Part shown: positions 14,299 through 50,245 of the stretch, piece after piece
Numbering within the stretch: position 1 is the stretch's first letter
Layout of the letters: every line of letters starts with the position of its first letter
Assembly: GCA_002269645.1 (NCBI GenBank)
Contig: NIVC01004069.1
Span: forward strand, 1 to 61,834
DNA from: Macrostomum lignano
Taxonomy: Eukaryota
Direction of reading: 5' to 3'
Length of the DNA stretch: 61,834 nt
Notes under the pieces: generated by a model
Told to the model about the DNA's origin: nothing
Database searches by the model: none
The model's input: only the letters and a program-made list of their open reading frames with translations
Program-made: the position numbers and the translations under genes

Positions 14299-14331
<33 letters not shown>

Positions 14332-14462
14332 GCCTGTCTGTCTGTCTGTCTCTGTGTGTCTGTCTGTCTGTCTGTCTGTCTGTCTGCCTGTCTGTCTGTC
14401 TGTCTGTCTATCTGTCTGTTTGTCCGTCTGTCTGTCTGTCTGCCTTGGTGTAGGTCTGTCTG

Positions 14463-14503
<41 letters not shown>

Positions 14504-14557
14504 GCCTTGGTGTCTGTCTGTCTGTCTGCCTGTCTGTTTGTCTGTCTGCCTGTCTGC

Positions 14558-14604
<47 letters not shown>

Positions 14605-14624
14605 CCTTGGTGTAGGTCTGTCTG

Positions 14625-14669
<45 letters not shown>

Positions 14670-14723
14670 GCCTTGGTGTCTGTCTGTCTATCTGCCTGTC
14701 TGTTTGTCTGTCTGCCTGTCTGC

Positions 14724-14773
<50 letters not shown>

Positions 14774-14827
14774 GCCTTGGTGTCTGTCTGTCTGTCTGCC
14801 TGTCTGTTTGTCTGTCTGCCTGTCTGC

Positions 14828-14882
<55 letters not shown>

Positions 14883-14978
14883 CCTGTCTGTTTGTCTGTC
14901 TGCCTGTCTGCCTTGGTGTCTGTCTGTCTGTCTGTTTGTCCGTCTGTCTGTCTGTCTGCCTTGGTGTAGGTCTGTCTG

Positions 14979-15011
<33 letters not shown>

Positions 15012-15032
15012 GCCTTGGTGTAGGTCTGTCTG

Positions 15033-15070
<38 letters not shown>

Positions 15071-15072
15071 CC

Positions 15073-15111
<39 letters not shown>

Positions 15112-18100
15112 ATGTCTGCATATCAGTCTGTCTTTCTGTCTGTCAGTCTGCCTTAGTGCCTGTATGTCTATCTATCCATCTATTTTTTTAAACCTACAGG
15201 ACGCCATGGAGATGAACAAATTAAACGTATTTCACTGGCACATTGTGGACGATCAGTCGTTTCCCTATCAGAGTGTGGTATTTCCTAAGCTATCTGAGAA
15301 GGTAAAGAATCGCTTTAAAGTGTTTTTTACTATGCTTTAATTATTTGTTTAATCTAAACAACATTTTTTAACACAGGGCGCATATGATAGTAATAGCATT
15401 TACTCATTATCCAATATTCGAGAGATAATTGAGTACGCCAGAGTTCGGGGCATTCGAGTTATACCCGAGTTTGACACGCCTGGTAAGTCATGCCGAACTT
15501 TGGTTTGATAAATGCTATGAAAATCCTTCCGGCTGAAGCAAATACCTTTACCCCAGATGTTCACACACTGGCCATAGAATAAACCCCTCTACCCCAGATG
15601 TACACACTGGCCATAGAATACAACCCCCTCTACCCCAGATGTACACACTGGCCATAGAATACAACCCCCTCTATCCCAGATGTACACACTGGTCATAGAA
15701 TACAACCCCCTCTACCCCAGATGTACACACTGGCCATAGAATACAACCCCTCTACCCCAGATGTTCACACTGGCCATAGAATAAACCCCTCTACCCCAGA
15801 TGTTCACACTGGCCATAGAATAAACCCATCTACCCCAGATGTACACACTGGTCATAGAATACAACCCCCTCTACCCCAGATGTTCACACACTGGCCATAG
15901 AATAAACCCCTCTACCCCAGATGTACACACTGGCCATAGAATACAACCCCCTCTACCCCAGATGTACACACTGGCCATAGAATACAACCCCCTCTATCCC
16001 AGATGTACACACTGGTCATAGAATACAACCCCCTCTACCCCAGATGTACACACTGGCCATAGAATACAACCCCTCTACCCCAGATGTTCACACTGGCCAT
16101 AGAATAAACCCCTCTACCCCAGATGTTCACACTGGCCATAGAATAAACCCATCTACCCCAGATGTACACACTGGTCATAGAATACAACCCCCTCTACCCC
16201 AGATGTACACACTGGCCATAGAATAGACTCCTCTACCCCAGATGTACACACTGGCCATAGAATACAACCCCCTCTACCCCAGATGTACACACTGGCTATA
16301 GAATAAAAACCCCTCTATCCCAGATGTGCACACACTGGCCATAGAATATAACCCCCTCGGCCCAGATGTACACACACTGGCCATAGAATAAAACCCCCTC
16401 ACCCCAGATGTACACACTGGCCATAGAATAAAACCCCCTCACTCCAGATGTACACACACTGGCAATAAAATAGAACCCCTCTACCCCAGATGCACACATA
16501 CTAAGCCTTTACTCAAGACATACACATCCTCAAGTAACTCAAAACCTTTCCATTTAGCTTAAGTTTTCTATCTATATGCTACTAAAAGCAGAAATTAAGA
16601 AACGCCATGCCTGTAAAATTTTCAGCCCACACGCACAGCTGGTCTCTTGGCTATCCGGAAATTTTCACGCAATGCTTCAACTATGCCAACCGCTGGACCG
16701 GTTTCTATGGTCCCATGAATCCGGCATTGAATGCTACCTTCGATTTTCTTAAAAAGTTGTACGCAGAAATTTCTAGCGTATTCAAAGATAATTATATTCA
16801 TCTTGGAGCTGACGAAGTTGGCACCTCTTGTTGGTAAGTGTTTAATGTTTATCTGTTGTACTCGTAGCTTATATCAAACATTAATGTCAAAGCTCTATTA
16901 TCACCTTACAGGGATAATAATCCCATTGTGAATCGAATGCGAGCTGATTTTGGTTTCTCTAGGAGTGATCAGCTGATTGATTATTATTTTCGACGGTAAA
17001 GTTACTTGCTGTGTGGATTTTAGTTAGTTCACACTCCCACTTTTCTTTTATTGAGTATTGTTTACACTGTACCAATACCCACAGATTGCAAAATATCATA
17101 ACATCTTTGAGTGCCGGCAAGTCAAATAGTAACAAACGCGGTTTTATTGTATGGCAAGAGGCTTACGATCACGGTGTTATGGTGAGTTTTGGTGACAAAT
17201 GGCTTCTGATTCGAGTAAATTCGATTCTTTAGTAAATGTTGTGTGTACATCTGGGGTTGCGATGGGGTTTTATTTTATGGCCAGTATGTGCACATCTAGG
17301 GTAGAGGGGGGGGGTTAATTCTATTGCCAGTGTGTGTGCATCTGGGGTAGAGGGGGTTTTATTCTACGGCCAGTGTGTGTAAATCTGTGGTAGAGGGGTT
17401 TTATTCCATGGTCTATGTACATCTGGGGTAGAGGGGTTTTATTCTATGGCCAGTGTGTACATTTGGGGTAGAAGTTTTATTCTATGGCCAGTGTGTGTAC
17501 ATCTGGGGTGAGGGGGGTTATTCTATGGCCAGTGTGTGTACATCTGGGGTAGAGGGGTTTATTCTATGGCCAGTGTGTGTACATCTGGGGTAGGGGAGTT
17601 TTTATCAGAACTATAACTGATTACAATACATTGAAGTGTAGCCAGTTTTGCAGTAAACTACAATAACCATCTTTCTGTTTTCTAAGTTTCAAAAACTTTA
17701 TGGAAATCTAACTTAAAGTTCAATAATACTATTAGTAGTAGTAATAAAATATGTCTTACTTTATTTTTCTCATTTTAGCTAAAGAGAGGCACCATAGTGC
17801 AGGTATGGAAAGGCGAAGCCTCCGATGTAGCCATGGTCGCCCAAGCTGGCTACCGAGTTCTCTACAGCACCTGCTGGTACCTGGACAGGCTAGAGTACGG
17901 TCCTCAGTGGACTAAAATGTACCTGTGCGATCCTATTGCTAATTATGCTGGCACTTATAATGGCGGACCGTTTCAACAGCAGATGCCGCAGCAGCAGCCG
18001 CCACCTCAGCAGCAACAGCAGCAGCAGCCACCGCCGCCTTCTTGGATGGCCAACGTTCTTGGCGGTGAAGCCTGCATGTGGAACGAATACCAAGACGATA

Positions 18101-21100
18101 ATACTGTGCTGCAGAGGATTTGGTAAGGCCACTTGAGGATTGACGCTGCACTCCATCAGATTTTATCTCCTTGAATCCCACACCCCGTCCTATTGAATCC
18201 CACACCAAATCCTATTGAATCCCACACCACATCCTATTGAATCCCACACCACATTCTTTTGAATCCCACACCACATCCTTTTGAATCCCACACCACATCC
18301 TTTTGAATACCACACCACATCCTTTTGAATCCCACACCACATCCTATTGAATCCCACACCAAATCCTATTGAATCCCACACCCCATGCTATTGAATCCCA
18401 CACCCCATCCTATTGAATCCCACACCCCATCCTATTGAATCCCACACCACATCCTATTGAATCCCACACCAAATCCTATTGAATCCCACACCACATCCTA
18501 TTGAATCCCACACCACATTCTTTTGAATCCCACACCACATCCTTTTGAATCCCACACCACATCCTTTTGAATACCACACCAAATCCTATTGAATCCCACA
18601 CCACATCCTATTGAATCCCACACCAAATCCTATTGAATCCCACACCCCATCCTATTGAATCCCACACCACATCCTATTGAATCCCACACCACATCCTATT
18701 GAATCCCACACCCCATCCTATTGAATCCCACACCACATCCTATTGAATCCCACACCAAATCCTATTGAATCCCACACCACATCCTATTGAATCCCACACC
18801 ACATTCTTTTGAATCCCACACCACATCCTTTTGAATCCCACACCACATCCTTTTGAATACCACACCACATCCTTTTGAATCCCACACCACATCCTATTGA
18901 ATCCCACACCAAATCCTATTGAATCCCACACCCCATCCTATTGAATCCCACACCCCATCCTATTGAATCCCACACCACATCCTATTGAATCCCACACCAC
19001 ATCCTGTTAAATCCACACCACATCCTATTGAATCCCACACCACATCCTGTTAAATCCACACCCCATCCTATTGAATTCCACACCCATTGTATTGAATCCC
19101 ACACCCAACCTTTTGAATTTCTCCAGGGCCAGGCACAATTCCGGATTTTCATCCGGTTCCTAATATAGAATGCCTATTTAAAAATGCTGGACGAAAGCCG
19201 GATGAATTGTTAACATTACGGATGAAAGTGTAAATTTTTTAGTACTTTCATCCGGTCCTAGCTCCGCGGGTATCTCCGGAAAAATCTCCGGTTTCCATTC
19301 GTTTTTAGCGGATGTAAATGCGGACTACAAAACCGGATCAAATCCGGATCAGCAGTGCAGGATGAAATACCGGGTTAATCTCCGGATAAAAAGCCGGATC
19401 TCTATAGTCCGTGAATTTGGCAGTATAAAATTGATTACTAATAAGAGATGAAAAAATCGGAAACACGTAACACAGTCTGGAGCAGTTATTCCGGCTTCAA
19501 AATTCACGCCTGGCGAAATATTCGTCCATTCCATACATTTTTTTTTCAAATTCGCACTAACACTGACTCTAACACTAGCTGCAATCGGCAGCGAAAGCGG
19601 TGCGAGGTTGCGATTGATGTGAAGGAATAGAATAGCGTGTTTAGACATCGTGTCTCATTTAACTCTACTGCAAGTAGCATGTGTAAGACACTTCAAATAG
19701 ACATAGGCGATTTACAGAGGGTCATGTGCCAGTTCCCTCTCGCGTCACCACCTACAATCTCATTATCGTCTACTCTCTCACCCACCTCAACCATCTCACC
19801 CTCTACTCTCTCAGTCTCTCTACTCTCACTATCTCTCTAATCTCCCACCTTCCCTCTACTCGCTCACATTCCTCAACCTCTCTCTCACCCTTCCTCACAG
19901 GATAAACCACCATAAATCGCTAACAGTACACATTGGGGGATCCACCACAGATTAAGAGATAAACCACCATATAGGCTAACACTACAGATTAAGGGCTCCA
20001 CCTTGGACACCAAAAGGGGACCACAAAATTTTACCTTTTAGTTAGCTTTAAATTCTTATGTTACTAATCGCGAACTATTAGGTTCGGCATGTCGTTAGTC
20101 CCGTCCAGCTCCGATATGTCGACAACCTGCTTGGATGCGTCTACCTGGCGTGCTTCGGCTTCTTTGACTAAGCCAGTCGGACGTCCGAGTACGTCGGAAT
20201 CTTACGGCTGGGTGGTGGACGGCTTGTTGGTTGTGGACTGATTGGTGGTACCCGGCTTGGTGCTTCCCGGATTGGTGGCATCCGGCTTGGTGGTTCCCGG
20301 ATTAGCCGCTTTCTTCGTTCTGACACGTTTCGGGTACCCCAGCTTCTCGCGAGCTGTTTTACCGCAACCGGTGAACGCTCGGTGGAGTTCGGCTTGGGTG
20401 TAAACGATAGATGCATTCGCCAGCCAAATTTTGGCTGCGGCCAATTTTCCAGGGTTTGCAGCACCTGACCTGTAGCCTGCAATCCGTCGGCCGGACAGAC
20501 TGGACGAAGCTAGTTCCTCGTCCGTAAATACGCTTCTGAATAGAGCCCTTATCAGCGTTAATCACGCTAAGCGTCGCTTATCCTTAGTCTTTTTGTGGGC
20601 CTCGTCATCTATGTCCACCGGGTGCTTCATCATTTCCTTATACTCCTCGTGCCGACTGTCCAGGTCGGACCTATGGCCAACGGTCACAAGTAGAAAAGGC
20701 TGCCTCTGACAGCGGTACACAACTTGAGATAGATGATCCCGGTTGCGTGTCGGACGTAGATTCGCATGCTGAAACCAGCGCACAAAATTCTCGGCCGTCA
20801 TCGCCTTCGGCCGCGTCAGATAGTTATTCGTCAGACATATCTGCATCAGCCGAAGCTGCTGATTGTGCCTGGACAAGTCCAGTCAAGCAGCTGGAAGCAC
20901 GCGTTATTAGAGCGTTGGCTGTCGATACATTGCGCTGAAGACAAACGAAGTTTCCGTGTTCTTGGCCTAACTGTTTCAGCAATGAAGCTTTAACTTTACG
21001 ACCGGCCATAATTTTTAGGCCCAGCTCGCGAATTTCCTCCTCGAACCTGCGTGATGTATGTACGTGGTTGCAGGGCATGTTGCAATCGCGTAATTTGAGA

Positions 21101-24100: not shown

Positions 24101-26576
24101 CCTATTGAATCCCACACCCCATCCTATTGAATCCCACACCCATTCTATTGAATCCCACACCACATCCTATTGAATCCCACACCACATGCTATTGAATCCC
24201 ACATCCATTCTATTGAATTCCACACCCCACCTTATTGAATCCCACACCCATCCTATTGAATCCCACACCACATCCTATTGAATCCCACACCACATCCTAT
24301 TGAATCCCACACTACATCCTATTGAATCCCACACTACATCCTATTGAATCCCACAATTTATCATATTGAATCCCACACGAATCCTATTGAATCCCACACC
24401 AATCCTGATGAAATACCACAACTAAAACCCATAGCTCGTAAATGCTACATCTTAAACCCCAGAAACTCCGCACCACATGATCATTTAGAATCAGATTTCA
24501 GCCTAAAGTCCGCAACGGCTCCAATTACACTTACAAACCCTGTTCATAAAGCTGGGCTACAAGCTTCACACATTCACCCCCGTGTCCCACCAATCCAACA
24601 GGCCTCTCGCTTCCGCAGTAGCTGAGCGTCTCTGGAGCTCACCGGAGGCCACTCGCGACCTGCTAGCCGCTGGGCGCCGTATCGAAGAGCAGCGCTGCAG
24701 GATGCGAGCTCGCGGCATCCCGGTCGGCGTAGCCAGCGGCCCCGGCTCTTGTCGGCCGCCGCCACCTGCCGGCAACAGATCAAGGAATAAGCTTCCAAAA
24801 AGGAATAGAAAAATTCCAAAACTAGAGAAACAGTCGCTAACAAATCGAATGGTTGGCGTTAAGCAAACGGCGGCTCCTTTGTCTGCTACTGGGTCTGGCT
24901 CCTCGAAAATTGACAGCGATTATGCGGACTCCGATCACGACTTGTCGTTTCGTCGAGCCCTTGTTAAACGTCGAGGGCCCCAGCAGCAGCATCGAGATAA
25001 GGTAAAATCAAAATCAGTAGTGTCAAAATCAAAATCATTATTGTCAAAATCAAAATCAGTAATGTCAAAATCTAAATCAGTAATGTCAAAATCTAAATCA
25101 GTAATGTCAAAATCTAAATCAGTAATGTCAAAATCAAAATCAGTAATGTCAAAATCTAAATCAGTAATGTCAAAATCTAAATCAGTAATGTCAAAATCAA
25201 AATCAGTAATGTCAAAATCTAAATCAGTAATGTCAAAATCAAAATCAGTAATGTCAAAATCAAAATCAGTAATGTCAAAATCTAAATCAGTAATGTCAAA
25301 ATCAAAATCAGTAATGTCAAAATCAAAATCAGTAATGTCAAAATCTAAATCAGTAATGTCAAAATCAAAATCAGTAATGTCAAAATCAAAATCAGTAATG
25401 TCAAAATCAAAATCAGTAATCTCAAAATCAAAATCAGTAATGTCAAAATCAAAATCAGTAATGTCAAAATCTAAATCAGTAGTGTCAAAATCAAAATCAG
25501 TAATGTCAAAATCAAAATCAGTAATGTCAAAATCTAAATCAGTAATGTCAAAATCAAAATCAGTAATGTCAAAATCAAAATCAGTAATGCCAAAATCAAA
25601 ATCAGTAATGTCAAAATCTAAATCAGTAATGTCAAAATCAAAATCAGTAATGTCAAAATCAAAATCAGTTATGTCAAAATCTAAATCAGTAATGTCAAAA
25701 TCAAAATCAGTAATCTCAAAATCTAAATCAGTAATGCCAAAATCAAAATCAGTAATGTCAAAATCAAAATCAGTAATGTCAAAATCAAAATCAGTAATCT
25801 CAAAATCAAAATCAGTAATGTCAAAATCAAAATCAGTAATGTCAAAATCAAAATCAGTAATGTCAAAATCAAAATCAGTAATGCCAAAATCAAAATCAGT
25901 AATCTCAAAATCTAAATCAGTAATCTCAAAATCAAAATCAATAGTCTTAAAATTAAAATCAGTAATGTCAAAATCAAATTCATTCATGTCAAAAATCAAA
26001 ATCAGTAGTTTCAAGATCAGTAATGTCAAAATCAAAATCAGTAATGTCAAAATCAAAATCAGTAATGTCAAAATCAAAATCAGTAATGCCAAAATCAAAA
26101 TCAGTAATCTCAAAATCTAAATCAGTAATGTCAAAATCAAAATCAGTAATGTCAAAATCAAAATCAGTAATGCCAAAATCAAAATCAGTAATGTCAAAAT
26201 CTAAATCAGTAGTGTCAAAATCAAAATCAGTAATTTCAAAATAAAAAATCAAATGCAGGTTCCAATCGCAGAGTATCAACATCGAAATAGGATTTACGCG
26301 ATTTCCAAGAGCCAGCATCATCAACACCCGGTGGCTCTGTTCCTAGCCCTGGTGCTGGCAGCTCTGGCTCTGTTCCTGGTGCTGTCCAGAGCGGTGTTCG
26401 TGCTGAGAATCACCCGCTACGGTGGCAGCACCGCAGGTTTGGAGTCGGCCGGCTCCACCGAGGGCAAGGCTGCATGGCTTCTGTGGCCCTGGCTGCGGCC
26501 CCGGCGACTCCTGCTGTGTCTGGCCATTGCCGCGGCTTGCAATGTGCTGGTCTGGCTCTGGACTTCTATGGTCTGA
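12134..26576 (+). CDS. HEXB: Beta-hexosaminidase (GH20, HEXA/HEXB-like), 844 aa, with signal peptide and a C-terminal hydrophobic extension; exons 12134-12223, 12852-13413, 13949-14061, 14142-14252, 15200-15301, 15377-15482, 16626-16833, 16912-16995, 17085-17181, 17779-18122, 24602-25001, 26259-26576
   Basis: All junctions are GT-AG and phases sum to 2535 nt with no internal stop. GH20 motifs: [69 protein letters not shown] (catalytic D-E), [28 protein letters not shown]. The exon 2 acceptor (12852 vs 12855) is a NAGNAG ambiguity. The HEXA vs HEXB distinction cannot be resolved here. Confidence 0.92.
12265..12780. repeat. 33-bp then ~36-bp minisatellites in hexosaminidase intron 1
   Basis: Units tcagattctcaacctgagattctcatctcagtg and aaggctaaagagtctcactatgagattatt(atc). 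Confidence 0.9.
13490..13735. repeat. CT-rich low-complexity tract in hexosaminidase intron 2
   Basis: Imperfect ctctc/ctact repeats. Confidence 0.85.
14277..15180. repeat. (TGTC)n microsatellite in hexosaminidase intron 4
   Basis: ~900 bp of tgtc with interspersed tgccttggtg variants. Confidence 0.97.
15545..16500 (+). repeat. ~40-bp minisatellite in hexosaminidase intron 6 (ctaccccagatgtacacactggccatagaatacaaccccct)
   Basis: Tandem units read directly. Confidence 0.95.
17241..17600 (-). repeat. Same ~40-bp minisatellite in inverted orientation, hexosaminidase intron 9
   Basis: Units gtgtacatctggggtagaggggtttattctatggccagtgt are the reverse complement of the intron 6 units. Confidence 0.92.
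18170..19118. repeat. 22-bp minisatellite (attgaatcccacaccacatcct), left part, hexosaminidase intron 10
   Basis: Tandem units; the same array resumes at 24063. Confidence 0.95.
19120..24062 (-). mobile_element. Internally deleted EnSpm/CACTA-type element inserted in the intron 10 minisatellite
   Basis: Spliced transposase 5' part: [50 protein letters not shown] (22009-22480), truncated at the first DG motif. TCCGG/CCGGA subterminal motifs are dense at both ends (19130-19430 and 23685-24040). No clean TIR pair was found. Confidence 0.7.
24063..24410. repeat. 22-bp minisatellite, right part of the intron 10 array
   Basis: Same unit as 18170-19118. Confidence 0.93.
25003..26250. repeat. 21-bp minisatellite filling hexosaminidase intron 11 (gtcaaaatcaaaatcagtaat)
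   Basis: Begins at the donor AAG|gtaaaa (25002) and ends before the acceptor aaatgcag (26258); source of the (SKSKSVM)n and (DFDITDF)n ORFs. Confidence 0.95.
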
Positions 26577-27593
26577 TCTTGAGCTTATTTTCGTCAGCTG
26601 TTTCACTTCTGTAAATGCTTTTGGCTCTTTCTGTATTGTCCACTCTACTCTATCTGCTCCCTACTCTATCTACTCCCTACTCTGTCCACTCTACTCTATC
26701 TGCTCCCTACTCTGTCAACCTCTAGTTTCCAATACTTCCGTCTCGTCGTCACTGCTGTTTCTAGCTCATCTGTCCACTCCTGCTTGCATCCCCTGTGCAG
26801 CATAATTTCCATGTTGATCTCGCTGTGGCACACGCTTTTTTCTAGCAAGTAGTTTGACCTGTCTTACCCTTTCCCTCAGTCGATCTCATCTTTATCTAGT
26901 ATGCTGCTGTTTTACGTTTCAATTTTGCTAATTTTACTATTCAATTTTGCACCGTCAAAATAGTCAGGTTATGAATGTAACTTTAAACATAACAACTTGT
27001 GCCTAACACATTAACTCTGTAATACCAGCAGCTTCCTTATTTGATTTCTGTTTGCTTCTGTTTTCGAATAGTTAGATTCGTTTTAAGCTTTGCTGTACGA
27101 ATAACTATAACTATACGATAACTGCAGTGTCAGTACATAGATAATCACTACATGTGTAACTGACATCGACTCCAATATACATGTAGAAGAAACAGTATTC
27201 TAATCATTGATTATCCAATCTTTTATAAACATTTCTGATAGCACACCCTGTACTTATCAACTTTGTGTCCGGCATTTTACCCTTTAAATGTCCTTAAATC
27301 AGACTTCCCTTTTCCTTTTTCTATCTAATGCAATCGCCGTTATAACAGTTTGTAGTCAGTGCAAGTTTTACCGCTGCGGTTGTTTATAACAAATATCTTG
27401 TAAGAGTATATTTAGTCACATTCTGAAAATGAATAAAAATAAATTAATCTTGTCGTGCATGCTTTTATTACTGAAGATTTACATCAGTTTACAGTTGAGT
27501 GTATTTTTATTCTGGATTTATTATGAAGAAAACAATTGACAAATATAACGCATCTGAAGTGTAAATATAATGATTACATTCAGACTGTGTCCG

Positions 27594-27642
27594 ATCGGGT
27601 CTCAACGAACTATAGAAAGTTTTTCCGTTACGAGACCGTCAT
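27594..27642 (-). promoter_or_regulatory. Type II SECIS element in the selenoprotein L 3'UTR
   Basis: mRNA sense: AUGAC-GGUCUC-GU-AACG-G-AAAAA-CUUUCUAUAG-UU-CGUU-GAGACC-CGAU. It has the AUGA/GA core, helix GGUCUC:GAGACC plus AACG:CGUU, unpaired adenosines and an apical mini-stem (AAC:GUU). It lies on the same strand, downstream of a gene with in-frame TGAs, and upstream of AATAAA at 27511-27506 and 27469-27464. Confidence 0.88.
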
Positions 27643-27739
27643 TAATGCGCTATATATATGTCAACTGCGTGTAATGTAATACATGTAATAAGTATACTAT
27701 TTTGGAATGGCAGAATGGATATTGGTATTTGACTGCAAC

Positions 27740-28100
27740 ATCAACATCTTGTACCGACAGCAGTCCTTTCAAAACATCCTGTACAGACAGCAGTCCTTTC
27801 AAAACATCCTGTACAGACAGCAGTCCTTACAAACATCTTGTACCGACAGCAGTCCTTACAAACATTTTGTACAGACAGCAGTCCTTACAAACATCTTGTA
27901 CCGACAGCAGTCCTTGCAAACATCTTGTACAGACAGCAGTCTTTGCAAACATCTTGTACAGACAGCAGTCCTTACAAACATCTACATGTACAGACAGCAG
28001 TCCTTGCAAACATCTTGTACAAACAGCAATCCTTGCAAACATCTTGTACAATCGGCAGTCCTTACAAACATCCTGTACAGACAGTAGTCCCTACAAACAT
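27740..28100. repeat. ~30-bp minisatellite between the selenoprotein L stop codon and the SECIS (caaacatcttgtacagacagcagtcctta)
   Basis: Tandem units read directly. Confidence 0.92.
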
Positions 28101-28224: not shown

Positions 28225-30425
28225 CTACATGTACTCGCGACACTTGGCTAGAATAGTATCAATACTCGGTCGGTCAGTAGACGATCCGCCTGCCTGACTA
28301 AACACAAGCCGACACTCTGCATCACTACCCGATCCGTTATATTCTACTTTCAGTAGAAAATCGCCACCCATCTGCAGCAGATCCTCTGTGTTCACATCGG
28401 CCGGTTTGTCCGTTTTAACACCACAAGCGGACAGTTGGGCGTAGTGATGAAGAGCCGCTACGCCCCAGCTGTTGACAGCGGAACGATTCAAACCAAAGCG
28501 TCGATACAGGTCACGTTCCGGGTCGGCGAAGGCACCTACTGAAGGATCATCGGATGTCTCTGTGCATGTACTATTTGGAGCTTTGTCAACTAGGCAGACG
28601 CGAGTTAACCAGTTGCGGATGACGTCTGGATCGGAAGCGAAGCTGATGAGCAGCGGGCGGCAGTGCGCAGCTTGCAGGCTTGGCTGCGCGGGTGTGTAAG
28701 ATTTGGGTTATTGTAAATAATATATTATCCATGACAGTTAGTCAGTCAACCTGTCACAATCGCAGAGTTAATACGGCATGCAGTGGCGTAACACGGAGGC
28801 GTGATCGGAAAACGAAACTTAAAAAGGCCAACAAGCTAGATTTATGACAAGAAATTAACAAGCCCGGGATAGCGGTAGCCCACCAAGAGGCAGGGGCAGG
28901 GCCCACCAAAAGATGGAGGGCGCCCACCAAAAGACAGGGGCTCCCACTAAGAGACAAAGGGTGTCCGCTAAAAGACAAGGACGTCCACCAAGAGACAGGG
29001 GTGCCCGCTAAAGGACAGGTACTCTAACCAATAGACAGGGGCACCCAGCAAGAGACAGGGGCGCCCACCAAGATCCTTGAGACCCTTAAGTTTGATTAAC
29101 CTTTACCTTGATTACTGACTAATCTCTGGACTGTTTTTACAAAACGACACTTACTCTAAGTGGAGCAACCCATCTCAAGACCCAATTGTCTGGCACAAGT
29201 ATATGCCCCTACCTAGGGCTTTGGGGACGCCTCAGACAAAAATTGAAATACTGTAAACTACTGTATGCATGTGTGGCACCATAGGGTAATAAGTGTGTTT
29301 GTTATAAAGTCATTCAGAAGTAGGTCATTCAGATAACCCAACATCATGCATGAGTATACATTTATAGCAGGAGATATAGTATATGGATGAACCTAAAGAG
29401 GTGCATACATTTTAAAGCTTAGCTGCCAGAAAAATGAAATTGCCATTTTGGGGAACTATGAAAATGATTTGGTATGCAAACTTTCAAAACTAAAAGGCTC
29501 TTAACAATCTCTTAATATAAAACTACTCACAAGCCGCAGCTGCAACTCTGCCGCATGCTGCTGTCATGGATGTCAGGCTAAATGGCGTAGGAAAACTAGC
29601 AAAAGAAATTTCGTTTCTTGGCCAATCAGATCGCTGAGTGGGAGCTGCTGCTTAGTCATTGCACAGACTAGTTGCATTTGAAGGACATCAGTAGCATTGG
29701 ATCCAGGACTTTGAGGTAGCCACTGCTGTAGATATTTTGAATCAAGCTTAGTGAGAAATTCATCCCACGATTCCTATAAAAAATCAAGAAAAATAATCAT
29801 ATAAAAAATTTTGTGAAATTAATATTTTAGTACAATAAAAATGTGGTTACCTCAAATTGCAAAAGATTTTCATATACTTCCTGAACCTCATATTGTGCAA
29901 AATTTGCTTTGAACAGGGAATCTAATTCCTTGAATGAGTTGACACTGCATCTAAAAATTATCATATATATAAAAAAGTTTTTTTATTGATCATTAATATA
30001 TAATGCTATTAATTTTTTCCTAAACTGCAAATATACTTACTGTTTAAGCATAGATGAATATAAGCCAATCAATCTTCCACAAGTCAGCAATCTTTTGTCA
30101 AAGTTTTCTATACTATCATCTGAAAGGTAAATTTAAAAGATAAAAATTAGTAGACATAGAATGTTTGCAGGGTATCAATTTACCTGTGAATAGTTGAAAT
30201 TTTCAGTTTCTAACTTAATTTGATCTTCAACTAACGATTTTTAATTATTATATTGGAAACTTATTTTGCCCTTAAATCACCAATTGATAATTAAAAACAG
30301 ACTTTTTGAGAAAACAGCTAACGATTACAAAGGAAGGCTTACTCACCTGCAAAAGTGTCCTTCAATTCAAGCAATACTTTGTTGGCATTTTGAATAAAAC
30401 TACTGACTGCAGAGAGGAAGTCCAT
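28225..30425 (-). CDS. SELENOL: Selenoprotein L (thioredoxin-fold, AhpC/TSA-like), 319 aa, with two Sec (UGA) at codons 153 and 156; exons 30425-30347, 30119-30041, 29950-29851, 29773-29531, 28683-28225
   Basis: All introns are GT-AG, phases 1/2/0/0, total 960 nt. Exon 4 reads LLLVFLRHLA-TGA-CAT-CCA-TGA-QQH (TGA at 29575-29573 and 29566-29564). Flanking motifs ENLLQFEESWDEFL, LLISF, ADPERDLYRRFGL, QMGGDFLL and DRPSID are typical of SelL/peroxiredoxin-like proteins. SECIS is present downstream. Confidence 0.9.
28870..29075. repeat. ~21-bp GC-rich minisatellite in selenoprotein L intron 4 (cccaccaagagacaggggtg-like)
   Basis: Imperfect tandem units. Confidence 0.8.
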
Positions 30426-30904
30426 TGTTCTGAAGATTAAAACTTATATATGGACTATTATGAACACAATAAACTGAATCTAGATTGTGCTAGCTACATG
30501 ATAAAACTGTATCTAAAGAAAAATTGGAGGCAGAAAAGGCGGCGCAAAAAATATAATACTATTTCGTTGAATCAATTTGAACGAAAAATGACATTAGTAT
30601 TTATAAATTTTTGGACTTTAGACAGTTTAAAGAAAATTTAAATGACGGAAAAGTAAATATTATAATATTAATTGCTTCTTGAAACAGCTATGTAACCACC
30701 AGAACCTGAAAACCATAGACTCATTTGATTAAATAATTCTAAAAAGTGATATCTTTAAAAATCGGAAAGAAACCTAAACATTCACGGAATCGTCCATGAA
30801 CCACTTCACACGTTCAAAGAAGCTATGCCCCCCTCAGCCGATGCCAAAAAATTGGGCCATACTGCTTTGGCCTGTAACTAAATACAGAACAACAGGATAC
30901 GCGT

Positions 30905-33630
30905 TCAGCGTCACAGCTGGCGCGCCTCAGGGTCAGCAGGTCGCGAATGAAACGCTACGTACGCCGCCGGCCGAATCCAGGGCGCCGGCGTCAGCCAGCA
31001 GACAGTCCACGAAACGCAAGTGCGTTTACCAAGGCCACATCATCATTCGCGTCGAGTCGTACTGCCCAACATCTGGTGCAGGAGGTGCTGCTGCAGGCAC
31101 AACAACAACAATTCAGAATACAGTTGCGTCACAGGGCGTACTTCAAGGCCAAGTCACGAATGAACGCCACGCCGCCGGCCGAATCCAAGACGCCGGTGTC
31201 AGTCAGCCCGTGCGCGCCTGCCCCCGCCGGCAGGGTGCCTGCAGCGTTAGCAGCAGCACCTCCTGCGCGCCTCTCTGGGCAGTACGATTCTGTGCTGACG
31301 ATGTGGCCTGCCAGCTGGAGTCGCTGACGGCGCAACAGGTCGCTTGGACGGACCAGGCCGGCGCGATGATACAAAGCCGCGTTGGTCACTCACTCGTAGC
31401 CGATCTTGAAGGCGGCTCGCAGCAGGCCATGCAGCGTGAAACAACAACAACATCGTCAGCGCCCAGGCGATCTCGGCGTTTGTACAGCAAGACGGTGTCG
31501 ATAGATCACTGCCTGGAACAACGCTGCCCTCTGGCGGCCAGGTAGGGCCTCGGACGGCAGGACTGCACTCTCAGAACGAAAGGCAGCCTAGGCAGCCCGC
31601 GGCGACGCCATAAATCTTCGCGGACGCCGGAAACCAAACCGCCAAGGTAGACGAACTGCTGACAACGCGGGGGCTCCATCACCTGTCCATACACGCCCCA
31701 GCACAAAATCACAGCCCCGATGTCATCAGAGACGAGCACGACAGTTTTCTGCGTGTTGACCACCAGGCGACACTTGCCGCATCATCAACTATAGATTGTA
31801 CAGTTGTCTTGGCGCCCTCAACAGTTCAGGTCAGCAGGGCGAAATCCTCGGCGCAGCCCAGCACGCTGAGCTGTCTCTCCGGTTGACGTCGACCCACGCG
31901 TCGCCGCAACAGAAAGCGGTCGTCGTTGTGTAGGAAGAGCGGTCCGCAGCACCCAGTCAAGCACCAGAACGAACAGGAACGGAGCAAGCGTATCTCCCTG
32001 AAGCACCCCCGGAGGATGTCTCAAAGAAGTCCGATAGGCCGTTCGGTGTTGAAACAGCAGCTTATCACGGTATCACGGTACATCGACATGATGGCGGAAA
32101 TCAGCTGCTCTGGCCCGTTGTACGCATGGAGCACCTATGGGAGCACAAACCTGACGACCGAGTCGAATGCCTTCTTGAAATTTATGAAGAGAACAATCGA
32201 TCAGGATCGGTGGCGTATCCGCGCCTCCTGGATGACTCGGCGAAGAGCTAGGATCTGCGTCATTATGCCGCGATGGGGCCGGAAGCCGTTCTGCTCAGGA
32301 CGCTGGTACGGATCCAGCACGGGTTGCGACTGCGATAGCAACATCCGGTTAAACAGCCTCGCAGCGCATGCTTCTCTGAAATTGTGAAATTGCGTTGATG
32401 TGCCTCCTCGGTGGGTTCTCTCGATGGTTCTCTCGTTGGGTGCCTCCTCTCCGAAGAGCACTCGGTTCATCACTCTGGCGACCTCGCTGGCTAACACAGT
32501 GGATGCGCCAGCGCCACGATGGGCACCTCATCCGGACCCAGCGCTTTCCCGCGCGGTAACTGTTGGTCGAGCCTCACAATGTCTACTGTGCTGACTAGTG
32601 CTAGGCTGAAAATCTCCTCTTCCAGCAACGGAATATCAGGGCGGCGCGTTGAAAATGGCGGCGAAGAACTCACGCAGCTCGTTCCTGCGCTCGTCGGCAG
32701 AGTCACCCGCCGGGTTTAGCGGAATGCGCCGCTTTCACCCCGTCAGAGCGTTGAAAGCCGACCAGGCCACGCGACCTCTGTCACAACAACCACTGGAGAC
32801 GGCCTGAATGGCGTCATCAACAACAGCCTGCTGGCGCTGCAGATAGACAGCCGCCAAGGCCTCCTCTGCCTCGCGCGTTGGCCGCCTGCTTAAACGAAGT
32901 CCCTTCTTCAGCACTTCCCTCGCTTGCCCAAACGCGGGGTCGTCTTGCCATACCGGCTGCCCCCGCTGGGCCGGTCGCATCAGAGGGACTGCTTGTTCTG
33001 CGGCGGCCCAAACTGAAACACACACAACTCCGCGTACTCGGCACCTCCACGATTGCCACCGAGCGCAGTGATGAAAGCGCTATCAAAGCAACTGTGCGTG
33101 TCGGCGTTCCTGAGCACGCGGTCGTAGCCGCTGCAGCGGACGGTAGAGCGAATCGCGAAGACAAAGGTCGCAGACGACGCGAGGAGTCCATGCTCAGACC
33201 GCATAGCCAGCGGCGTGATGGCGCGGCGGCGCTCGCGGAAGCGCACCAGCACATGATCGAGCTGTGCCTGCCTCCTTGTTGCGTTCCGGCCACGCACACA
33301 TTCTGATGCTTGCGCTTGCAGCCCACAAAAGTTGCGAGTCTGCCCGGTGGCTTGCGGAAGCGGGTGTTGGCCGACACCATTTCCTGCTTCTCTAGAAAAT
33401 CCTCCAGCGCTCTGTTGCTGCCGTTCTCACCTGGAGTGACGAACGGTGACCGCTAAGACCTCATTAGCGGTTAGCGTTAGCGGTTCGCGTTCAGGTCTCC
33501 GAGGATGATCACTGTGTCACACTGCAACGTTTGCCTCCACCTGTACCGAAAGCTGCTCGAAGAAGTCCTTAGCCTCATCAGGACAGGTGGCGGGGGGCGC
33601 ATACACACAGAACCGGCGAACGTTTGTTAC
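30905..33630 (-). mobile_element. 5'-truncated, frameshifted RTE-clade non-LTR retrotransposon
   Basis: APE motif VIILGDLNA (~33490-33520), GKALGPDEVP, EQNGFRPHRG..QILALRR, GVLQGDTLAPFLF, YAED in place of YADD, YLG, and LQLAGHI. Confidence 0.85.
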
Positions 33631-33939
33631 AATTACTTGACTTGTGACTATATGCAAGGTAATATTGGGTTGTAGTGCTTGGTAGTATAGCTTGTCCCTC
33701 CCCCTTCAAAATTTTTCTGGATCTGGAGTGTTCTGGGGAGCTCAAGGACGAAAATGCCCTTGAAGTGAAGCTTGAAAAAAAGTGAAGCTTGCAGACAAAT
33801 CCCTGAGACTTTATTGCATTAAATATGATTCTTTTACTAACCAGTCAGTAGCCTTGGACCAAACACTTGCTTCTACCGTCGGAAAACTGCTCACCCGAAA
33901 TTTCTCGTGCTACAAAAGACTCTCAAAATGTCCAACAAG

Positions 33940-34270
33940 GGCTTTAGCACCAAGGGCTATAGCACCAGGGGCTTTAGCATCAGAGGCTTTAGCACCAGAG
34001 GCTTTAGCACCAGGGGATTTAGCACCAAGGGTTTATCACCACGGGCGCCAGCGGCACAGGGGACGCCAGCGGCACCAGAGGCTTTAGCACCAGGGGCGAC
34101 AGCGGCACCAGGGGCGACAGCGGCACCACGGGCGACAGCAGCACCAGGTGATTTAGCACCAAGGGTTTATCACCAGGGGCTCCAGCGGCACCAGGGAGGC
34201 CAGCGGCACCAGAGGCTTTAGCACCAGGGGCGACAGCGGCACCAGGGGCGACAGCGGCACCAGGGGCGTC
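33940..34270. repeat. GC-rich 18-bp-based tandem repeat (ttagcaccaggggc / gcggcaccaggggcgaca)
   Basis: Tandem units read directly. Confidence 0.85.
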
Positions 34271-34373
34271 ATAACTTTTGCCTCTCCCCCAAGCTACATG
34301 AACGTCTCCTAGTGCTTCACCCCACTTGTTCGCTCTTGACAGTGAAGCAATCACGTGTGACCTACAATTGTCA

Positions 34374-36090
34374 CTTTGACTTACTTTTCTTAGCTGCAGG
34401 GCGGTCCGAAGACGCAGCGGGGAGGCGAGCGTCGCCCATTCCGCTAATCCCTGAAAGACCCGCTTAGGCTAGGGCGCGGGGCCGGTCAGGGAGGTCTGCC
34501 GGTCCTGTCTGCAGCGTTGTCTTCGGTGGGGAAGACGGAGGCTCGCTCGGTGGCCCGGAAGAACCGGATGAGCCGTGGGATGTTCTCGGGCCGGCAAACG
34601 TCGTCCAGGGACGGGTTGGGCCCGAGGTGGTTGAGCCGGTCTCGGTTGAAGGCCGGGCAGTAGCAGACGAAGTGCTTGGCGTCTTCGTTCTCGAGGTTGC
34701 AGAAAGGGCAGAGTTCGCTCCGGCGGGCACTTCGGAGGAAACAATGCCTTGCAAAGCAACCGTGACCTGTGAAGGTCATAGTGAGAGCGCGGATATCTTT
34801 TCGATTTTGGTTCAAAAGGATTCTCCGCAGCTTGAGGGACGGATTGGGCACTGCCGCACGAGATTGGCGGCAGTTGGAGATACCATCCCATCTGCGCAAG
34901 TGTAGGATGTCCGCCCAGTCGTTAATCTGACGATTGATGACTGTGGCGGGGATGGGGGCCAGGGGCACGGGGCCAAGGGGCGAGCCGGAACAGCCTGCCT
35001 TAGCGAGGGAGTCGGCAGAGCTCGTTACCTTTGAAGCCGGCGTGTCCTGGGATCCATGTAAGCCGGACGGTGTTCCTTCGAGCCAGCTTGTTGAGCTGCC
35101 CGATACAGTCGCGGACTGTTCGGGAGTTCGTAGTGGTGTGACACAGGGCCTGCAAAGCGGCCTGGCTGTCAGAGTGGAAGAAAATTCTTCTGTCCTTGAA
35201 ATCCCTGCAGTGGAGCTCAGCTGCACAGGAGCTGATGGCAAGGATTTCGTTCTGGAAGACGCTGGAGAGTCTGCCAGTGTGTTGGGCGTGAGTAGCGATC
35301 ACGCGGCCGTTGATAAGAATGCAGACTCCAAAGCCGGATAAACCGTCTTTGGAGGATCCGTCAGTAAAGCAGTGAACCTCCTGAGGAGCCCAGCTGTCGT
35401 TGGCGTTCTCCCTAGAGGGGATAGTGACTTTGAAGCGTTGATTGAGGGAGCGCGGCTCAGCGTCCGAAAGGACAGCCGCATTCCCACTCTCCTCCAGAAC
35501 TTTAAGGCACAGGTCAGAGTGCGGCAGGAGCTTGCGCTTCGCCATCGCTCTTTGTGGCTTGAAGCTAACGCCAGCCTCGATGAGCCGGCGGGTAGTTTTA
35601 GCAGCCTCGCGACGGACAAAGATGTCCAGAGGCGCGAGGCAAAGAAAGGCGTTGAGGCCGTCAAAGGGAGCAGAGAGCGGGGCATTCAGGATCATGCGGC
35701 ACGCACGTCCCTGCACCTTTTTGAGGGCTTCGTGGCAGGTTTTAATCTGCAAGGCGCTGGTCCAGACCAGGCCGGCGTAAGTAACGGCCGGTCGGACCAT
35801 TGCGGTAAAGATCCACCAGAGCTGTTTCGGGGTGAGGCCCCAGGTGGTGCCGACGGCTCTGCGCAGCTGCGCAAGAATCGCGAGGGCTTTTTTGGTTTTG
35901 GCCTGGACGTGGGTGGACCAGCTCAGCCGATGGTCCAGCGTCACGCCGAGACACTTGGCTTGCTTGCAGGATGGAATTTCCATCCCGTAAAGCTTTAGTG
36001 GGCGAATACGCCAGTTAACCCTGCTGGTGAACATGATCGCGACAGTTTTGGTCTCAGAGAGCCTGAGGCCGCACCTGTCCACCCATTTGT
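34374..36090 (-). mobile_element. 3' half of a Loa/Lian-like (R1 group) LINE: RT C-terminus, RNase H, C-terminal Cys/His knuckle, 3'UTR
   Basis: KCLGVTLD, FTDGS..DSQAAL..WIPGH (RNase H), GHGCF..CPFC..EDAKHFVCYC, and 3' end ..CCTGCAGCTAAG..GTAAGTCAAAG. Frameshifted. Confidence 0.9.
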
Positions 36091-36730
36091 AGTGTGAGCA
36101 TCTTTTGTGTAATTTCTGAATTCTATTAGTTAGTTAGCTTCTGTATTATTGTTGTTAATTATTGTATTTCGCTTTAATTTAGTCCCGTTTTCAATGTACT
36201 TTTTTTCTTGATTAGTTAGAGTTTATTTTGCGTAAACCGGCTAGAAGTCAGAAGCCAACTGTGACTCAGCGGAGGGTTGAGTTTTTCTGCGAACCCCGGC
36301 TTTGCGCGGCCAGCCAATCAGAACCGGCCTGGACCCTGGCACGCGGCAAAATCCGCTTTGAAAATCCGGTTTCGCGCTTTGAGGCGCCTGAGTTCGTCAC
36401 CCCCGGTCCATGTTTTGCTCCCTGCCGGACCGCTTCAGTCTTATAGCGTAACGTCTACGGCAAATTTCTGTCTGAAGTCGTCGCTATTTAGCGCGGTTAG
36501 ATAGAGACTGTCGGATTTGACCAAGTACGCGGCCTCGACCCAGAGGGCCTCAGTGTCACACTGAAGGGCAGCGCTGATAGAACTTAGTCAGTGCTCCATT
36601 GCTCCGTTAGGGATAGGTGACTAGAGGAAAGAGCAGAAACAGACAATCGAGTACGCTCGTAGAAAATGTAGAGGGTTATACATGTTATTTGTTGGTCTGT
36701 ATGGCCAGGGACTCCTGGGCCCACTTCGCG

Positions 36731-43964: not shown

Positions 43965-50245
<6,281 letters not shown>

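What the first reader, a model, noticed from the sequence alone, without database searches (positions are those of the whole stretch)
27594..27642. Canonical type II SECIS serving two UGA codons
Seen: AUGA..GA quartet, a ~10-bp helix with a 2-nt bulge, an A-run and an apical mini-stem, ~580 nt 3' of the true stop. Established: eukaryotic Sec insertion needs such a 3'UTR element bound by SBP2. This independently supports reading both TGAs as Sec. I found only this one SECIS, which would then have to recode two UGAs only two codons apart.
Basis: partly seen in the sequence, partly recalled or inferred. Interest (0 to 1): 0.75.

Follow-up and report, generated by a model that had tools for sequence, protein, structure and literature searches.

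The report
SECIS of a flatworm selenoprotein L
The hairpin is very probably the selenocysteine-insertion signal in the 3' UTR of an unannotated Macrostomum lignano selenoprotein L gene; this family is already known to read two UGA codons two residues apart with one such signal, so the finding is correct but largely ordinary.

Summary
The described element is real. On the minus strand, 27642-27594 reads AUGA-C, an 11-bp helix with a 2-nt bulge, four unpaired A, a 3-bp mini-stem, then C-GA-U. It lies 582 nt after the TAG stop of a five-exon gene and 71 nt before the first AATAAA.

The gene is selenoprotein L (SelL). TGA codons 153 and 156 (FLRHLA-U-HP-U) align with TGA-x-P-TGA in more than 25 homologues. 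The source is Macrostomum lignano, whose public gene model skips the UGA exon.

Support for the SECIS:
- It is the only [AG]UGA...GA candidate in 1.8 kb downstream of the stop.
- It is the only hit of an energy-filtered descriptor in the whole window (0.15 expected).
- It ranks first, second and below eleventh in the window with three covariance models built from other species' SelL SECIS.
- It sits in a 148-nt domain with z = -5.4.

"Canonical" is overstated. The A-run lies further from the core than in the other SelL SECIS, the 3' core is CGAU, helix I closes a multibranch junction, and Rfam finds nothing (though it also misses the two control SelL SECIS tested).

Verdict: a new member of a known kind, of modest interest.

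The parts
27594..27642 (-). SECIS hairpin: AUGA (27642-27639), C, helix II (27637-27631/27604-27598 and 27628-27625/27608-27605, with a UA bulge at 27630-27629), unpaired AAAA (27624-27621), 3-bp mini-stem (27620-27618/27611-27609), C, GA (27596-27595), U
   Evidence: Sequence. MFE and pair probabilities. Only hit of the energy-filtered descriptor in the window. Top hit with model R1 (15.7 bits), second with R3 (13.5 bits), 9.8 bits with R2.
27532..27668 (-). Extended structured domain. A basal stem pairs GCAGUUGACA (27668-27659) plus AUAUAGCGCAUU (27655-27644) with GAUGCGUUAUAU (27554-27543) plus UGUCAAUUGU (27541-27532): 22 bp including 4 G.U. It encloses the SECIS hairpin and two small hairpins (27594-27580 and 27578-27560). 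This is the likely helix I, closing a multibranch junction.
   Evidence: MFE -45.3 kcal/mol, z = -5.41, 0 of 200 shuffles. The opposite strand is weaker (-33.7 kcal/mol, z = -2.44). Single copy in the window.
29564..29575 (-). UxxU redox motif: TGA codon 153 (29575-29573), His, Pro, TGA codon 156 (29566-29564)
   Evidence: Aligned with TGA-x-P-TGA in homologues.
30347..30425 (-). SelL exon 1 (ATG at 30425)
   Evidence: Gene model with GT-AG introns. The N-terminus is weakly conserved.
30041..30119 (-). SelL exon 2
29851..29950 (-). SelL exon 3
   Evidence: tblastn with homologues P0062 and P0064.
29531..29773 (-). SelL exon 4, which carries both TGA codons
   Evidence: tblastn with P0005, P0060 and P0064.
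28225..28683 (-). SelL exon 5, ending in TAG (28227-28225). Contains the invariant QMGGDF and DRP motifs.
   Evidence: tblastn E about 1e-16.
27743..28100 (-). 29-nt x 12.2 tandem repeat inside the 3' UTR, between the stop and the SECIS. It accounts for 358 of the 582 nt of spacing.
27464..27522 (-). Three AATAAA polyadenylation signals (first bases at 27522, 27511 and 27469). The first lies 71 nt after the SECIS 3' end.

Best explanation
The element is the SECIS of a selenoprotein L (SelL) mRNA of the marine flatworm Macrostomum lignano. The gene has five exons on the minus strand (30425-28225) and encodes 319 residues with a peroxiredoxin-like thioredoxin fold. Its redox motif is U-H-P-U, with both U encoded by TGA.

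The proposed mechanism follows what is established for eukaryotic SECIS elements. The 3'-UTR hairpin forms the AUGA/GA kink-turn core. The core is bound by SECIS-binding protein 2, which recruits eEFSec with Sec-tRNA(Sec) to the ribosome. One element then redefines both UGA codons, about 1.08 kb upstream and nine nucleotides apart, as happens in other SelL mRNAs.

What is shown here: the gene model, family membership, conservation of both UGA positions, and the sequence and structure features and position of the hairpin. What is inferred: presence of the element in the mature mRNA, SBP2 binding, and actual Sec insertion.
For: Gene and family
- A spliced ORF of 960 nt has GT-AG introns, TGA at codons 153 and 156, and no other in-frame stop.
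- Exons 3-5 are colinear with SelL homologues.
- Exon 5 gives phmmer hits to 45 cluster representatives.
- The family alignment has invariant QMGGDF and D-x-P motifs (DRP in all but one of 13 sequences) plus the LLRHxA-U-xP-U motif.
- In homologous cDNA contigs both positions are TGA: L001, L002/3, L004/6, L009, L010 and L013 and 27 of 40 metagenome or metatranscriptome loci.
- NCBI names cluster members 'selenoprotein L'.
- Organism: exon 5 is 99% identical to M. lignano UniRef100_A0A1I8IZH1.

Literature
- SelL has two Sec residues two apart, inserted with one SECIS (PMC3316567). It carries a diselenide and occurs in aquatic organisms (PMC2397514).

SECIS
- All primary determinants are present.
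- It is the only [AG]UGA...GA helix candidate in 1.8 kb after the stop.
- It is the only energy-filtered descriptor hit in 2 x 61.8 kb, against 0.15 expected.
- With model R1, built from 12 SelL SECIS of other species, it is the top hit of the whole window at 15.7 bits. With the same model, nine SelL-locus hits outside the training set (one with a doubtful AAGA core) scored 15-27 bits, and the best apparent false hit in 227 kb scored 14.0.
- Its core, AUGAC...CGAU, matches that of L010 (AUGAC...CGAG), L052 and L038 (both GUGAC...CGAU).
- The enclosing 148-nt domain has z = -5.41 on the mRNA strand and -2.44 on the other strand. Four G.U pairs in the basal stem fit RNA-level selection on this strand.
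- AATAAA signals begin 71 nt downstream.
Against: - Rfam gave no SECIS hit at the gathering threshold or at E up to 10. This is weak evidence, because Rfam also missed the two control SelL SECIS tested (L001 and L006).
- Model R2 (21 sequences) gave only 9.8 bits, below eleven other window hits.
- Model R3 ranked it second, behind a chance-looking site at 19405-19454.
- Whole-window E-values (0.66 to above 10) are not significant without the positional prior.
- Its geometry is an outlier. The AA motif lies 13 nt after AUGAN, there is a one-sided 2-nt bulge, a C.C mismatch abuts the core, and the base before GA is C rather than G or U.
- No simple helix I with an internal loop is present.
- No transcript, paralogue or other Macrostomum sequence could be retrieved to show that the element is in the mRNA or is conserved.
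Confidence: 0.85

Rival explanations
1. The hairpin matches the SECIS descriptor by chance. The real SECIS of this SelL mRNA lies elsewhere, for example in an unrecognised downstream 3'-UTR exon or beyond the region scanned.
For: - Loose SECIS descriptors occur about once per 100 kb by chance.
- R2 scores it only 9.8 bits, and R3 ranks a clearly irrelevant site above it.
- Rfam is silent.
- Its spacing is atypical compared with the other SelL SECIS.
Against: - There is no other [AG]UGA...GA helix candidate in 1.8 kb downstream, and none on the gene's strand elsewhere in the window that lies in a UTR.
- The chance of an energy-filtered match in this 1.8 kb is about 0.002.
- It sits just upstream of three AATAAA signals and inside a domain with z = -5.41.
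Confidence: 0.08
2. The locus is a decaying or non-functional SelL copy. The first UGA terminates translation, giving a 152-residue product, and the hairpin is a relic or irrelevant.
For: - The M. lignano genome is repeat-rich and duplicated, and a 94%-identical second copy exists (P0002).
- LINE fragments flank the gene.
- The redox motif U-HP-U-QQH departs from the family consensus U-LP-U-RDH, and the protein carries lineage-specific insertions.
- Pfam scores fall just below the cut-offs.
Against: - All five exons keep frame and GT-AG sites, and no stop other than the two family-specific TGAs occurs.
- Exon 5, downstream of the UGAs, retains every invariant family residue.
- The SECIS core and helix are intact.
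Confidence: 0.04
3. The 140-nt structured domain is a 3'-UTR element with another role, such as mRNA stability, localisation, or the terminal inverted repeats of a small transposon. The SECIS-like motifs within it are incidental.
For: - The long basal stem with two extra hairpins is not the textbook SECIS layout.
- An imperfect inverted repeat is detectable at the DNA level.
Against: - Four G.U pairs make the structure 11.6 kcal/mol better on the mRNA strand.
- The arm is single-copy in the window.
- The 5' strand of the stem ends one nucleotide before AUGA, as helix I should.
- L022 and L025 SelL SECIS show the same topology.
Confidence: 0.03

Closest known systems
Selenoprotein L (SelL/SELENOL) of fish and marine invertebrates (Shchedrina et al. 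2007, as cited in PMC3316567, PMC2397514 and PMC3473315)
   Same: - Peroxiredoxin-like (AhpC-TSA_2) fold with a roughly 150-residue N-terminal extension.
- UxxU motif, with both Sec encoded by TGA two codons apart.
- One 3'-UTR SECIS for both.
- An aquatic host organism.
   Different: - The motif is U-HP-U-QQH instead of U-LP-U-RDH.
- Two lineage-specific insertions are present (16 residues after the WL motif, and one after QMGGDFLL).
- The SECIS has a longer 5' arm with a 2-nt bulge and a branched base.
- The host phylum, Platyhelminthes, was reported to have lost SelL (PMC3828610).
Type II eukaryotic SECIS elements in general (core UGAN/KGAW, unpaired A's, extra helix; PMC3753652)
   Same: AUGA...GA core, helix II, an unpaired A-run on the 5' side, an apical mini-stem, and a 3'-UTR location.
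   Different: - The base before GA is C, not G or U.
- A C.C mismatch lies next to the core.
- Helix II has a one-sided 2-nt insertion ('bending').
- Helix I is separated from GA by 39 nt that form two hairpins.
SelL SECIS of metatranscriptome loci L022/L025 and L010, L052, L038
   Same: - L010, L052 and L038 share the C...C flanks around the core.
- L022 and L025 share the topology in which helix I encloses the SECIS hairpin plus a 3' hairpin.
   Different: Those elements have an uninterrupted 10-bp helix II, with the A's starting 10-11 nt after the core. They score 28-45 bits with R1, against 15.7 for the window.
Selenoprotein P mRNAs
   Same: One mRNA decodes several UGA codons as Sec using 3'-UTR SECIS elements.
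   Different: SelP has 10 or more UGAs spread over the ORF and two SECIS elements (PMC3316567). Here two UGAs lie nine nucleotides apart and one SECIS is present. The proteins are unrelated.
PRXL2C/AAED1, the Cys-containing homologues
   Same: Same fold and family. Biomphalaria cluster members are named both 'peroxiredoxin-like 2C' and 'selenoprotein L'.
   Different: Cys homologues have CxxC and need no SECIS.

Membership tests
Eukaryotic SECIS element (type II) | 5' core (A/G)UGAN | tested here: met
   AUGAC at 27642-27638.
Eukaryotic SECIS element (type II) | 3' core KGAW, able to form tandem G.A/A.G pairs with the 5' core | tested here: inconclusive
   CGAU at 27597-27594. GA and W (U) are present, but K is C rather than G or U (consensus from PMC3753652). 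The same C occurs in the SelL SECIS of L010, L052 and L038.
Eukaryotic SECIS element (type II) | Helix II of constrained length between the core and the conserved A's | tested here: inconclusive
   11 bp with a 2-nt 5' bulge. AA starts 13 nt after AUGAN, against 9-12 nt in the 18 other SelL SECIS candidates inspected. From my memory of the SECISearch default pattern, the allowed range is 10-13, so this is at the edge.
Eukaryotic SECIS element (type II) | Conserved unpaired A's in the apical loop or bulge | tested here: met
   AAAA at 27624-27621 is unpaired in both the MFE and centroid structures.
Eukaryotic SECIS element (type II) | Additional apical helix (helix III or mini-stem) that distinguishes type II from type I | tested here: met
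   A 3-bp stem ACU/AGU with a 6-nt loop, pair probabilities 0.58-0.75. Weak but present.
Eukaryotic SECIS element (type II) | Helix I plus an internal loop below the core | tested here: inconclusive
   A strong 22-bp stem starts 1 nt 5' of AUGA, but its 3' strand lies 40 nt after GA, so it closes a multibranch junction.
Eukaryotic SECIS element (type II) | Located in the 3' UTR of an mRNA with an in-frame UGA | tested here: met
   582 nt after the stop, 71 nt before AATAAA, on the same strand as the gene. This is a genomic inference; no transcript was available.
Eukaryotic SECIS element (type II) | Recognised by curated or family covariance models | tested here: inconclusive
   Rfam gave no hit, but the controls also failed. 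My own models gave R1 15.7 bits (rank 1), R3 13.5 bits (rank 2) and R2 9.8 bits (not in the top 11). SECISearch3 was not available.
Eukaryotic SECIS element (type II) | Binds SBP2 and supports Sec insertion | not testable with these tools
   Needs binding or reporter experiments.
Selenoprotein L | Peroxiredoxin-like / AhpC-TSA_2 thioredoxin-fold domain homologous to SelL | tested here: met
   - Pfam AhpC-TSA scores 25.5 bits (cut-off 26) and AhpC-TSA_2 scores 23.8 bits (cut-off 27), both just below threshold.
- phmmer and tblastn hits to SelL homologues reach E 1e-9 to 1e-16.
- QMGGDF is invariant across the alignment; the DRP motif is present (R in 12 of 13 sequences).
Selenoprotein L | UxxU motif, with both Sec encoded by UGA, at the redox site | tested here: met
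   TGA codons 153 and 156 align column for column with the TGA pair of the homologues.
Selenoprotein L | Conserved N-terminal extension | tested here: met
   The IGxY and ExxWDxFLxxxD motifs align. Exon 3 is hit by tblastn.
Selenoprotein L | Single SECIS serving both UGAs | tested here: met
   One candidate only. Most homologue loci where a SECIS candidate was detected show a single hit; L021, L026 and L028 have two.
Selenoprotein L | Diselenide bond between the two Sec residues | not testable with these tools
   Biochemical property reported for the family (PMC2397514).

The most novel reading that the evidence does not exclude
The functional unit may be a roughly 140-nt branched SECIS rather than the 49-nt hairpin alone. 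In this reading a 22-bp helix I closes a junction that holds the kink-turn hairpin and two extra 3' hairpins. A similar layout is seen in an unrelated SelL lineage (L022/L025). That would be a SECIS architecture I could not find described in the literature searched. It might influence how efficiently two adjacent UGAs are recoded.
Probability: 0.2. Interest if true: 0.5.

Novelty: new member of a known kind. Interest (0 to 1): 0.3.

Why it matters
- It corrects an annotation. The public M. lignano gene model (A0A1I8IZH1, named 'Protein kinase domain-containing protein') skips exons 2-4 and most of exon 1, including the UGA-bearing exon, and fuses the last exon to neighbouring sequence.
- It shows that a flatworm retains SelL. 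A comparative study of three other platyhelminths inferred that the family was lost before the phylum split (PMC3828610).
- It fits the reported restriction of SelL to aquatic animals (PMC2397514, PMC13493947).
- It adds a SECIS with unusual geometry, useful for testing and training SECIS predictors. Rfam missed the two control SelL SECIS I tested.
- It does not change the understanding of Sec decoding. One SECIS serving two UGAs two codons apart is already established for this family.

Tried and rejected
- **Rfam.** I ran the whole window at the gathering threshold, then 1 kb and 131 nt at E up to 10. No SECIS was found. I discounted this because the two control SelL SECIS tested (L001 and L006) were missed too.
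- **Word-indexed protein searches.** The full protein and exon 5 both returned nothing. Only the exhaustive HMMER search worked.
- **Spliced M. lignano protein look-ups.** I therefore obtained no transcript or paralogue DNA for Macrostomum.
- **P0029.** This homologue shares the insertions, but its contig is only 653 nt with no 3' UTR. Look-ups of P0035 and P0068 found no record.
- **Plain MAFFT alignment of SECIS elements.** It misaligned the 3' cores. I replaced it with a hand-registered seed in which only the apical loop was padded with N.
- **Site at 19405-19454 (+).** It was the top hit with R3, but I rejected it. It has a GUGA core with two mismatched helix pairs, is not formed in the MFE (z = -0.65), and lies 3' of a hexosaminidase gene.
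- **Site at 29915-29970 (-).** A weak model hit that straddles the intron 2/exon 3 boundary and so does not lie in a UTR.
- **Transposon inverted repeat.** I considered whether the basal stem is a transposon's terminal repeat. It is single-copy in the window and its stability is strand-asymmetric.

Full report
**Observation.** On the minus strand, 27642-27594 reads AUGA C GGUCUCG UA ACGG AAAA ACU UUCUAU AGU UCGU UGAGACC C GA U. RNAfold gives a 7-bp plus 4-bp helix interrupted by a 2-nt bulge, four unpaired A, and a 3-bp mini-stem with a 6-nt loop. The energy is -12.4 kcal/mol. Pair probabilities are above 0.9 for most helix II pairs and 0.58-0.75 for the mini-stem.

**The gene.** Upstream on the same strand I assembled five exons: 30425-30347, 30119-30041, 29950-29851, 29773-29531 and 28683-28225. 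All introns are GT-AG. The ORF is 960 nt and ends in TAG at 28227-28225. Its only internal stops are TGA at codon 153 (29575-29573) and codon 156 (29566-29564), in the context FLRHLA-U-HP-U-QQH. Pfam gives near-threshold AhpC-TSA and AhpC-TSA_2 matches.

An exhaustive HMMER search with exon 5 found 45 cluster representatives. The best two are Macrostomum lignano UniProt entries, at 99% and 94% identity. This identifies the organism. It also shows that the public model, a 993-residue 'protein kinase domain-containing protein', jumps from the first six codons straight to exon 5, skipping the UGA exon.

The remaining hits are proteins of about 300 residues that carry LLRHFA-W-xP-W-RDH. In their DNA both 'W' codons are TGA. 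This holds for L001, L002/3, L004/6, L009, L010 and L013 and for 27 of 40 loci retrieved from metagenomes and metatranscriptomes. NCBI names members of these clusters 'selenoprotein L'. Alignment A2 shows homology over the whole length, including the N-terminal extension. tblastn places exons 3, 4 and 5 colinearly. The gene is therefore a SelL.

**What is already known.** SelL is described as a family with two Sec residues (PMC3473315) that form a diselenide, and as restricted to aquatic organisms (PMC2397514). [quoted passage not shown] 2007, which I could not open).

**Is the hairpin the SECIS?**

*Negative or weak results.*
- Rfam finds no SECIS in the window at any threshold.
- Rfam also finds none in L001 or L006, whose SECIS are obvious (L006 scores 39 bits with my model). 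This negative result is therefore uninformative.
- A loose descriptor is not rare: 2 hits against 1.15 per shuffled window.

*Positive results.*
- In the 1.8 kb downstream of the stop this is the only [AG]UGA...GA element with a helix.
- With an energy-filtered descriptor it is the only hit on either strand of the window, against 0.15 per 123.7 kb in shuffles. That is about 0.002 expected in the 3' region.

*Family-specific covariance models.* I collected SECIS candidates found downstream of the stop codons of SelL mRNAs from other species. They share one architecture: NUGA, N, a 10-11-bp helix, AAA(A), a mini-stem, N, GA. A hand-registered alignment of 12 of them shows 95.8% pairing and 58 double-sided changes across 10 pairs. 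This figure is partly inflated because the candidates were selected by pairing.
- **R1**, built from this alignment, places its best hit in the entire window, with filters off, at 27589-27648 on the minus strand: 15.7 bits, E = 0.66, next best 12.5 bits.
- On 41 homologue loci, R1 gave nine hits outside its training set, all on the coding strand, scoring 15-27 bits. One of them (L019) has a doubtful AAGA core. The best apparent false hit scored 14.0.
- **R2**, rebuilt from 21 model-aligned sequences, gives the candidate only 9.8 bits, below eleven unrelated window hits.
- **R3**, built from the 14 cleanest sequences, gives 13.5 bits, rank 2. Rank 1 is a site at 19405-19454 on the other strand, which does not fold as a SECIS and lies beside a hexosaminidase gene.

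The candidate is always the best hit in the SelL 3' region. Its score depends on the model because its 5' arm is 2 nt longer than in the other SelL SECIS.

**Why 'canonical' is too strong.**
- The 3' core is CGAU, whereas the published consensus is KGAW (PMC3753652). L010, L052 and L038 also have C at that position.
- C.C flanks the core.
- Helix II has a one-sided 2-nt insertion.
- AA begins 13 nt after AUGAN.

The published SECISearch3 grading criteria penalise such mismatches and 'bending' (PMC3753652). I therefore expect a grade below A, but I could not run the program.

**Additional support from context.**
- Three AATAAA signals begin 71 nt after the element.
- Of the 582 nt between the stop and the SECIS, 358 nt are a 29-nt tandem repeat. 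Without it the spacing would be about 225 nt, within the 19-430 nt range of the homologues.
- The hairpin sits on a long basal stem. Segments 27668-27659 and 27655-27644 pair with 27554-27543 and 27541-27532, giving 22 bp with four G.U pairs. The stem ends one nucleotide before AUGA.
- The 148-nt domain folds at -45.3 kcal/mol with z = -5.41 (0 of 200 shuffles). The opposite strand gives -33.7 kcal/mol and z = -2.44. The arm is single-copy in the window.
- This is what helix I should look like, except that two small hairpins (27594-27580 and 27578-27560) lie between GA and the returning strand. The SelL SECIS of L022 and L025 show the same topology.

**Conclusion.** I estimate a probability of about 0.85 that this is the functional SECIS of a previously unannotated M. 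lignano SelL gene and that it serves both UGA codons.

It is a new member of a known kind. The small points of interest are these:
- A published survey of three other flatworms inferred loss of SelL in the phylum (PMC3828610). This marine flatworm has it, which agrees with the aquatic distribution of the family (PMC13493947).
- The SECIS geometry, including the branched base, is unusual.

What is missing is transcript evidence, a comparison with other Macrostomum sequences, and any experiment.

Noticed in passing
window 27743-28100 (3' UTR, minus-strand gene): A 29-nt unit repeated 12.2 times (89% matches) fills most of the space between the SelL stop codon and the SECIS. Its role is unknown. 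It may be a minisatellite or repeated binding sites.
   Followed up: partly
window 28878-29073 (intron 4): A 20-nt GC-rich tandem repeat (9.6 copies) lies inside the last intron.
   Followed up: no
window 30425-28225: Exon GC content jumps from 31-38% (exons 1-3) through 46% (exon 4) to 53% (exon 5) within one gene.
   Followed up: no
window 28225-31200, compared with UniRef100_A0A1I8IZH1 (P0001): The public M. lignano model fuses upstream GC-rich sequence, the first six SelL codons, exon 5 and downstream sequence into a 993-residue 'protein kinase domain-containing protein'. It omits the UGA-bearing exon. A second copy (P0002, 94% identical) is fused into a 3935-residue 'RNase H domain' model.
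   Followed up: partly
L021 974-1015 and 1221-1262; L026 959-1000 and 1207-1248; L028 592-633 and 840-881: SelL mRNAs of one uncultured eukaryote lineage carry two tandem SECIS copies, 31 and about 279 nt after the stop. For L021 (the locus included in the model search) they score 40.5 and 35.6 bits with R1. The vertebrate survey PMC3316567 describes two SECIS elements as unique to SelP.
   Followed up: partly
L022 912-1000 and L025 (homologous position): Helix I (GGCAGCA/UGCUGCC) encloses the SECIS hairpin plus a second 3' hairpin (z = -3.34). This is the same branched layout as in the window.
   Followed up: partly
L001, L006 (and the window): The Rfam release 15 scan reported none of the SelL SECIS tested, even at E up to 10 on short inputs. 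L006 scores 39 bits with a family-specific model.
   Followed up: yes
L008 17570-17625 (Biomphalaria glabrata CM074204.1): A good SECIS (27.4 bits, not in the training set) lies inside the last 56 nt of the annotated 'selenoprotein L' CDS. This suggests the annotated C-terminal tail runs into the 3' UTR.
   Followed up: no
L019 1563-1621: A SECIS-like hairpin with a 10-bp helix has AAGA instead of AUGA in the core. It is either a sequence error or not a SECIS.
   Followed up: no
window 19405-19454 (+): A GUGA...GA site scores 11-16 bits with all three SelL SECIS models. It lies 3' of a Glyco_hydro_20 (hexosaminidase) gene whose exons span roughly 15.2-18.1 kb. It does not form in the MFE, and I judged it a chance match.
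   Followed up: yes
window 32800-36100, 44200-49100, 51900-53800 (minus strand): The GC-rich blocks (56-63% GC) are non-LTR retrotransposon fragments, with endonuclease, reverse transcriptase and RNase H domains.
   Followed up: partly
window 14264-15200 and 24582-26250: Long 'ORFs' here are translations of short tandem repeats: an (SVCL)n-like repeat upstream of the hexosaminidase exon, and a 21-nt x 11 repeat at 26011-26247. The Pfam 'antifreeze beta roll' hit in the second is probably a low-complexity artefact.
   Followed up: no
window 31200-30950 (minus strand): Two near-identical segments encoding '...DSAGGVAFIRDLALKYAL' lie just upstream of the SelL start. This is a local duplication of unknown meaning.
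   Followed up: no
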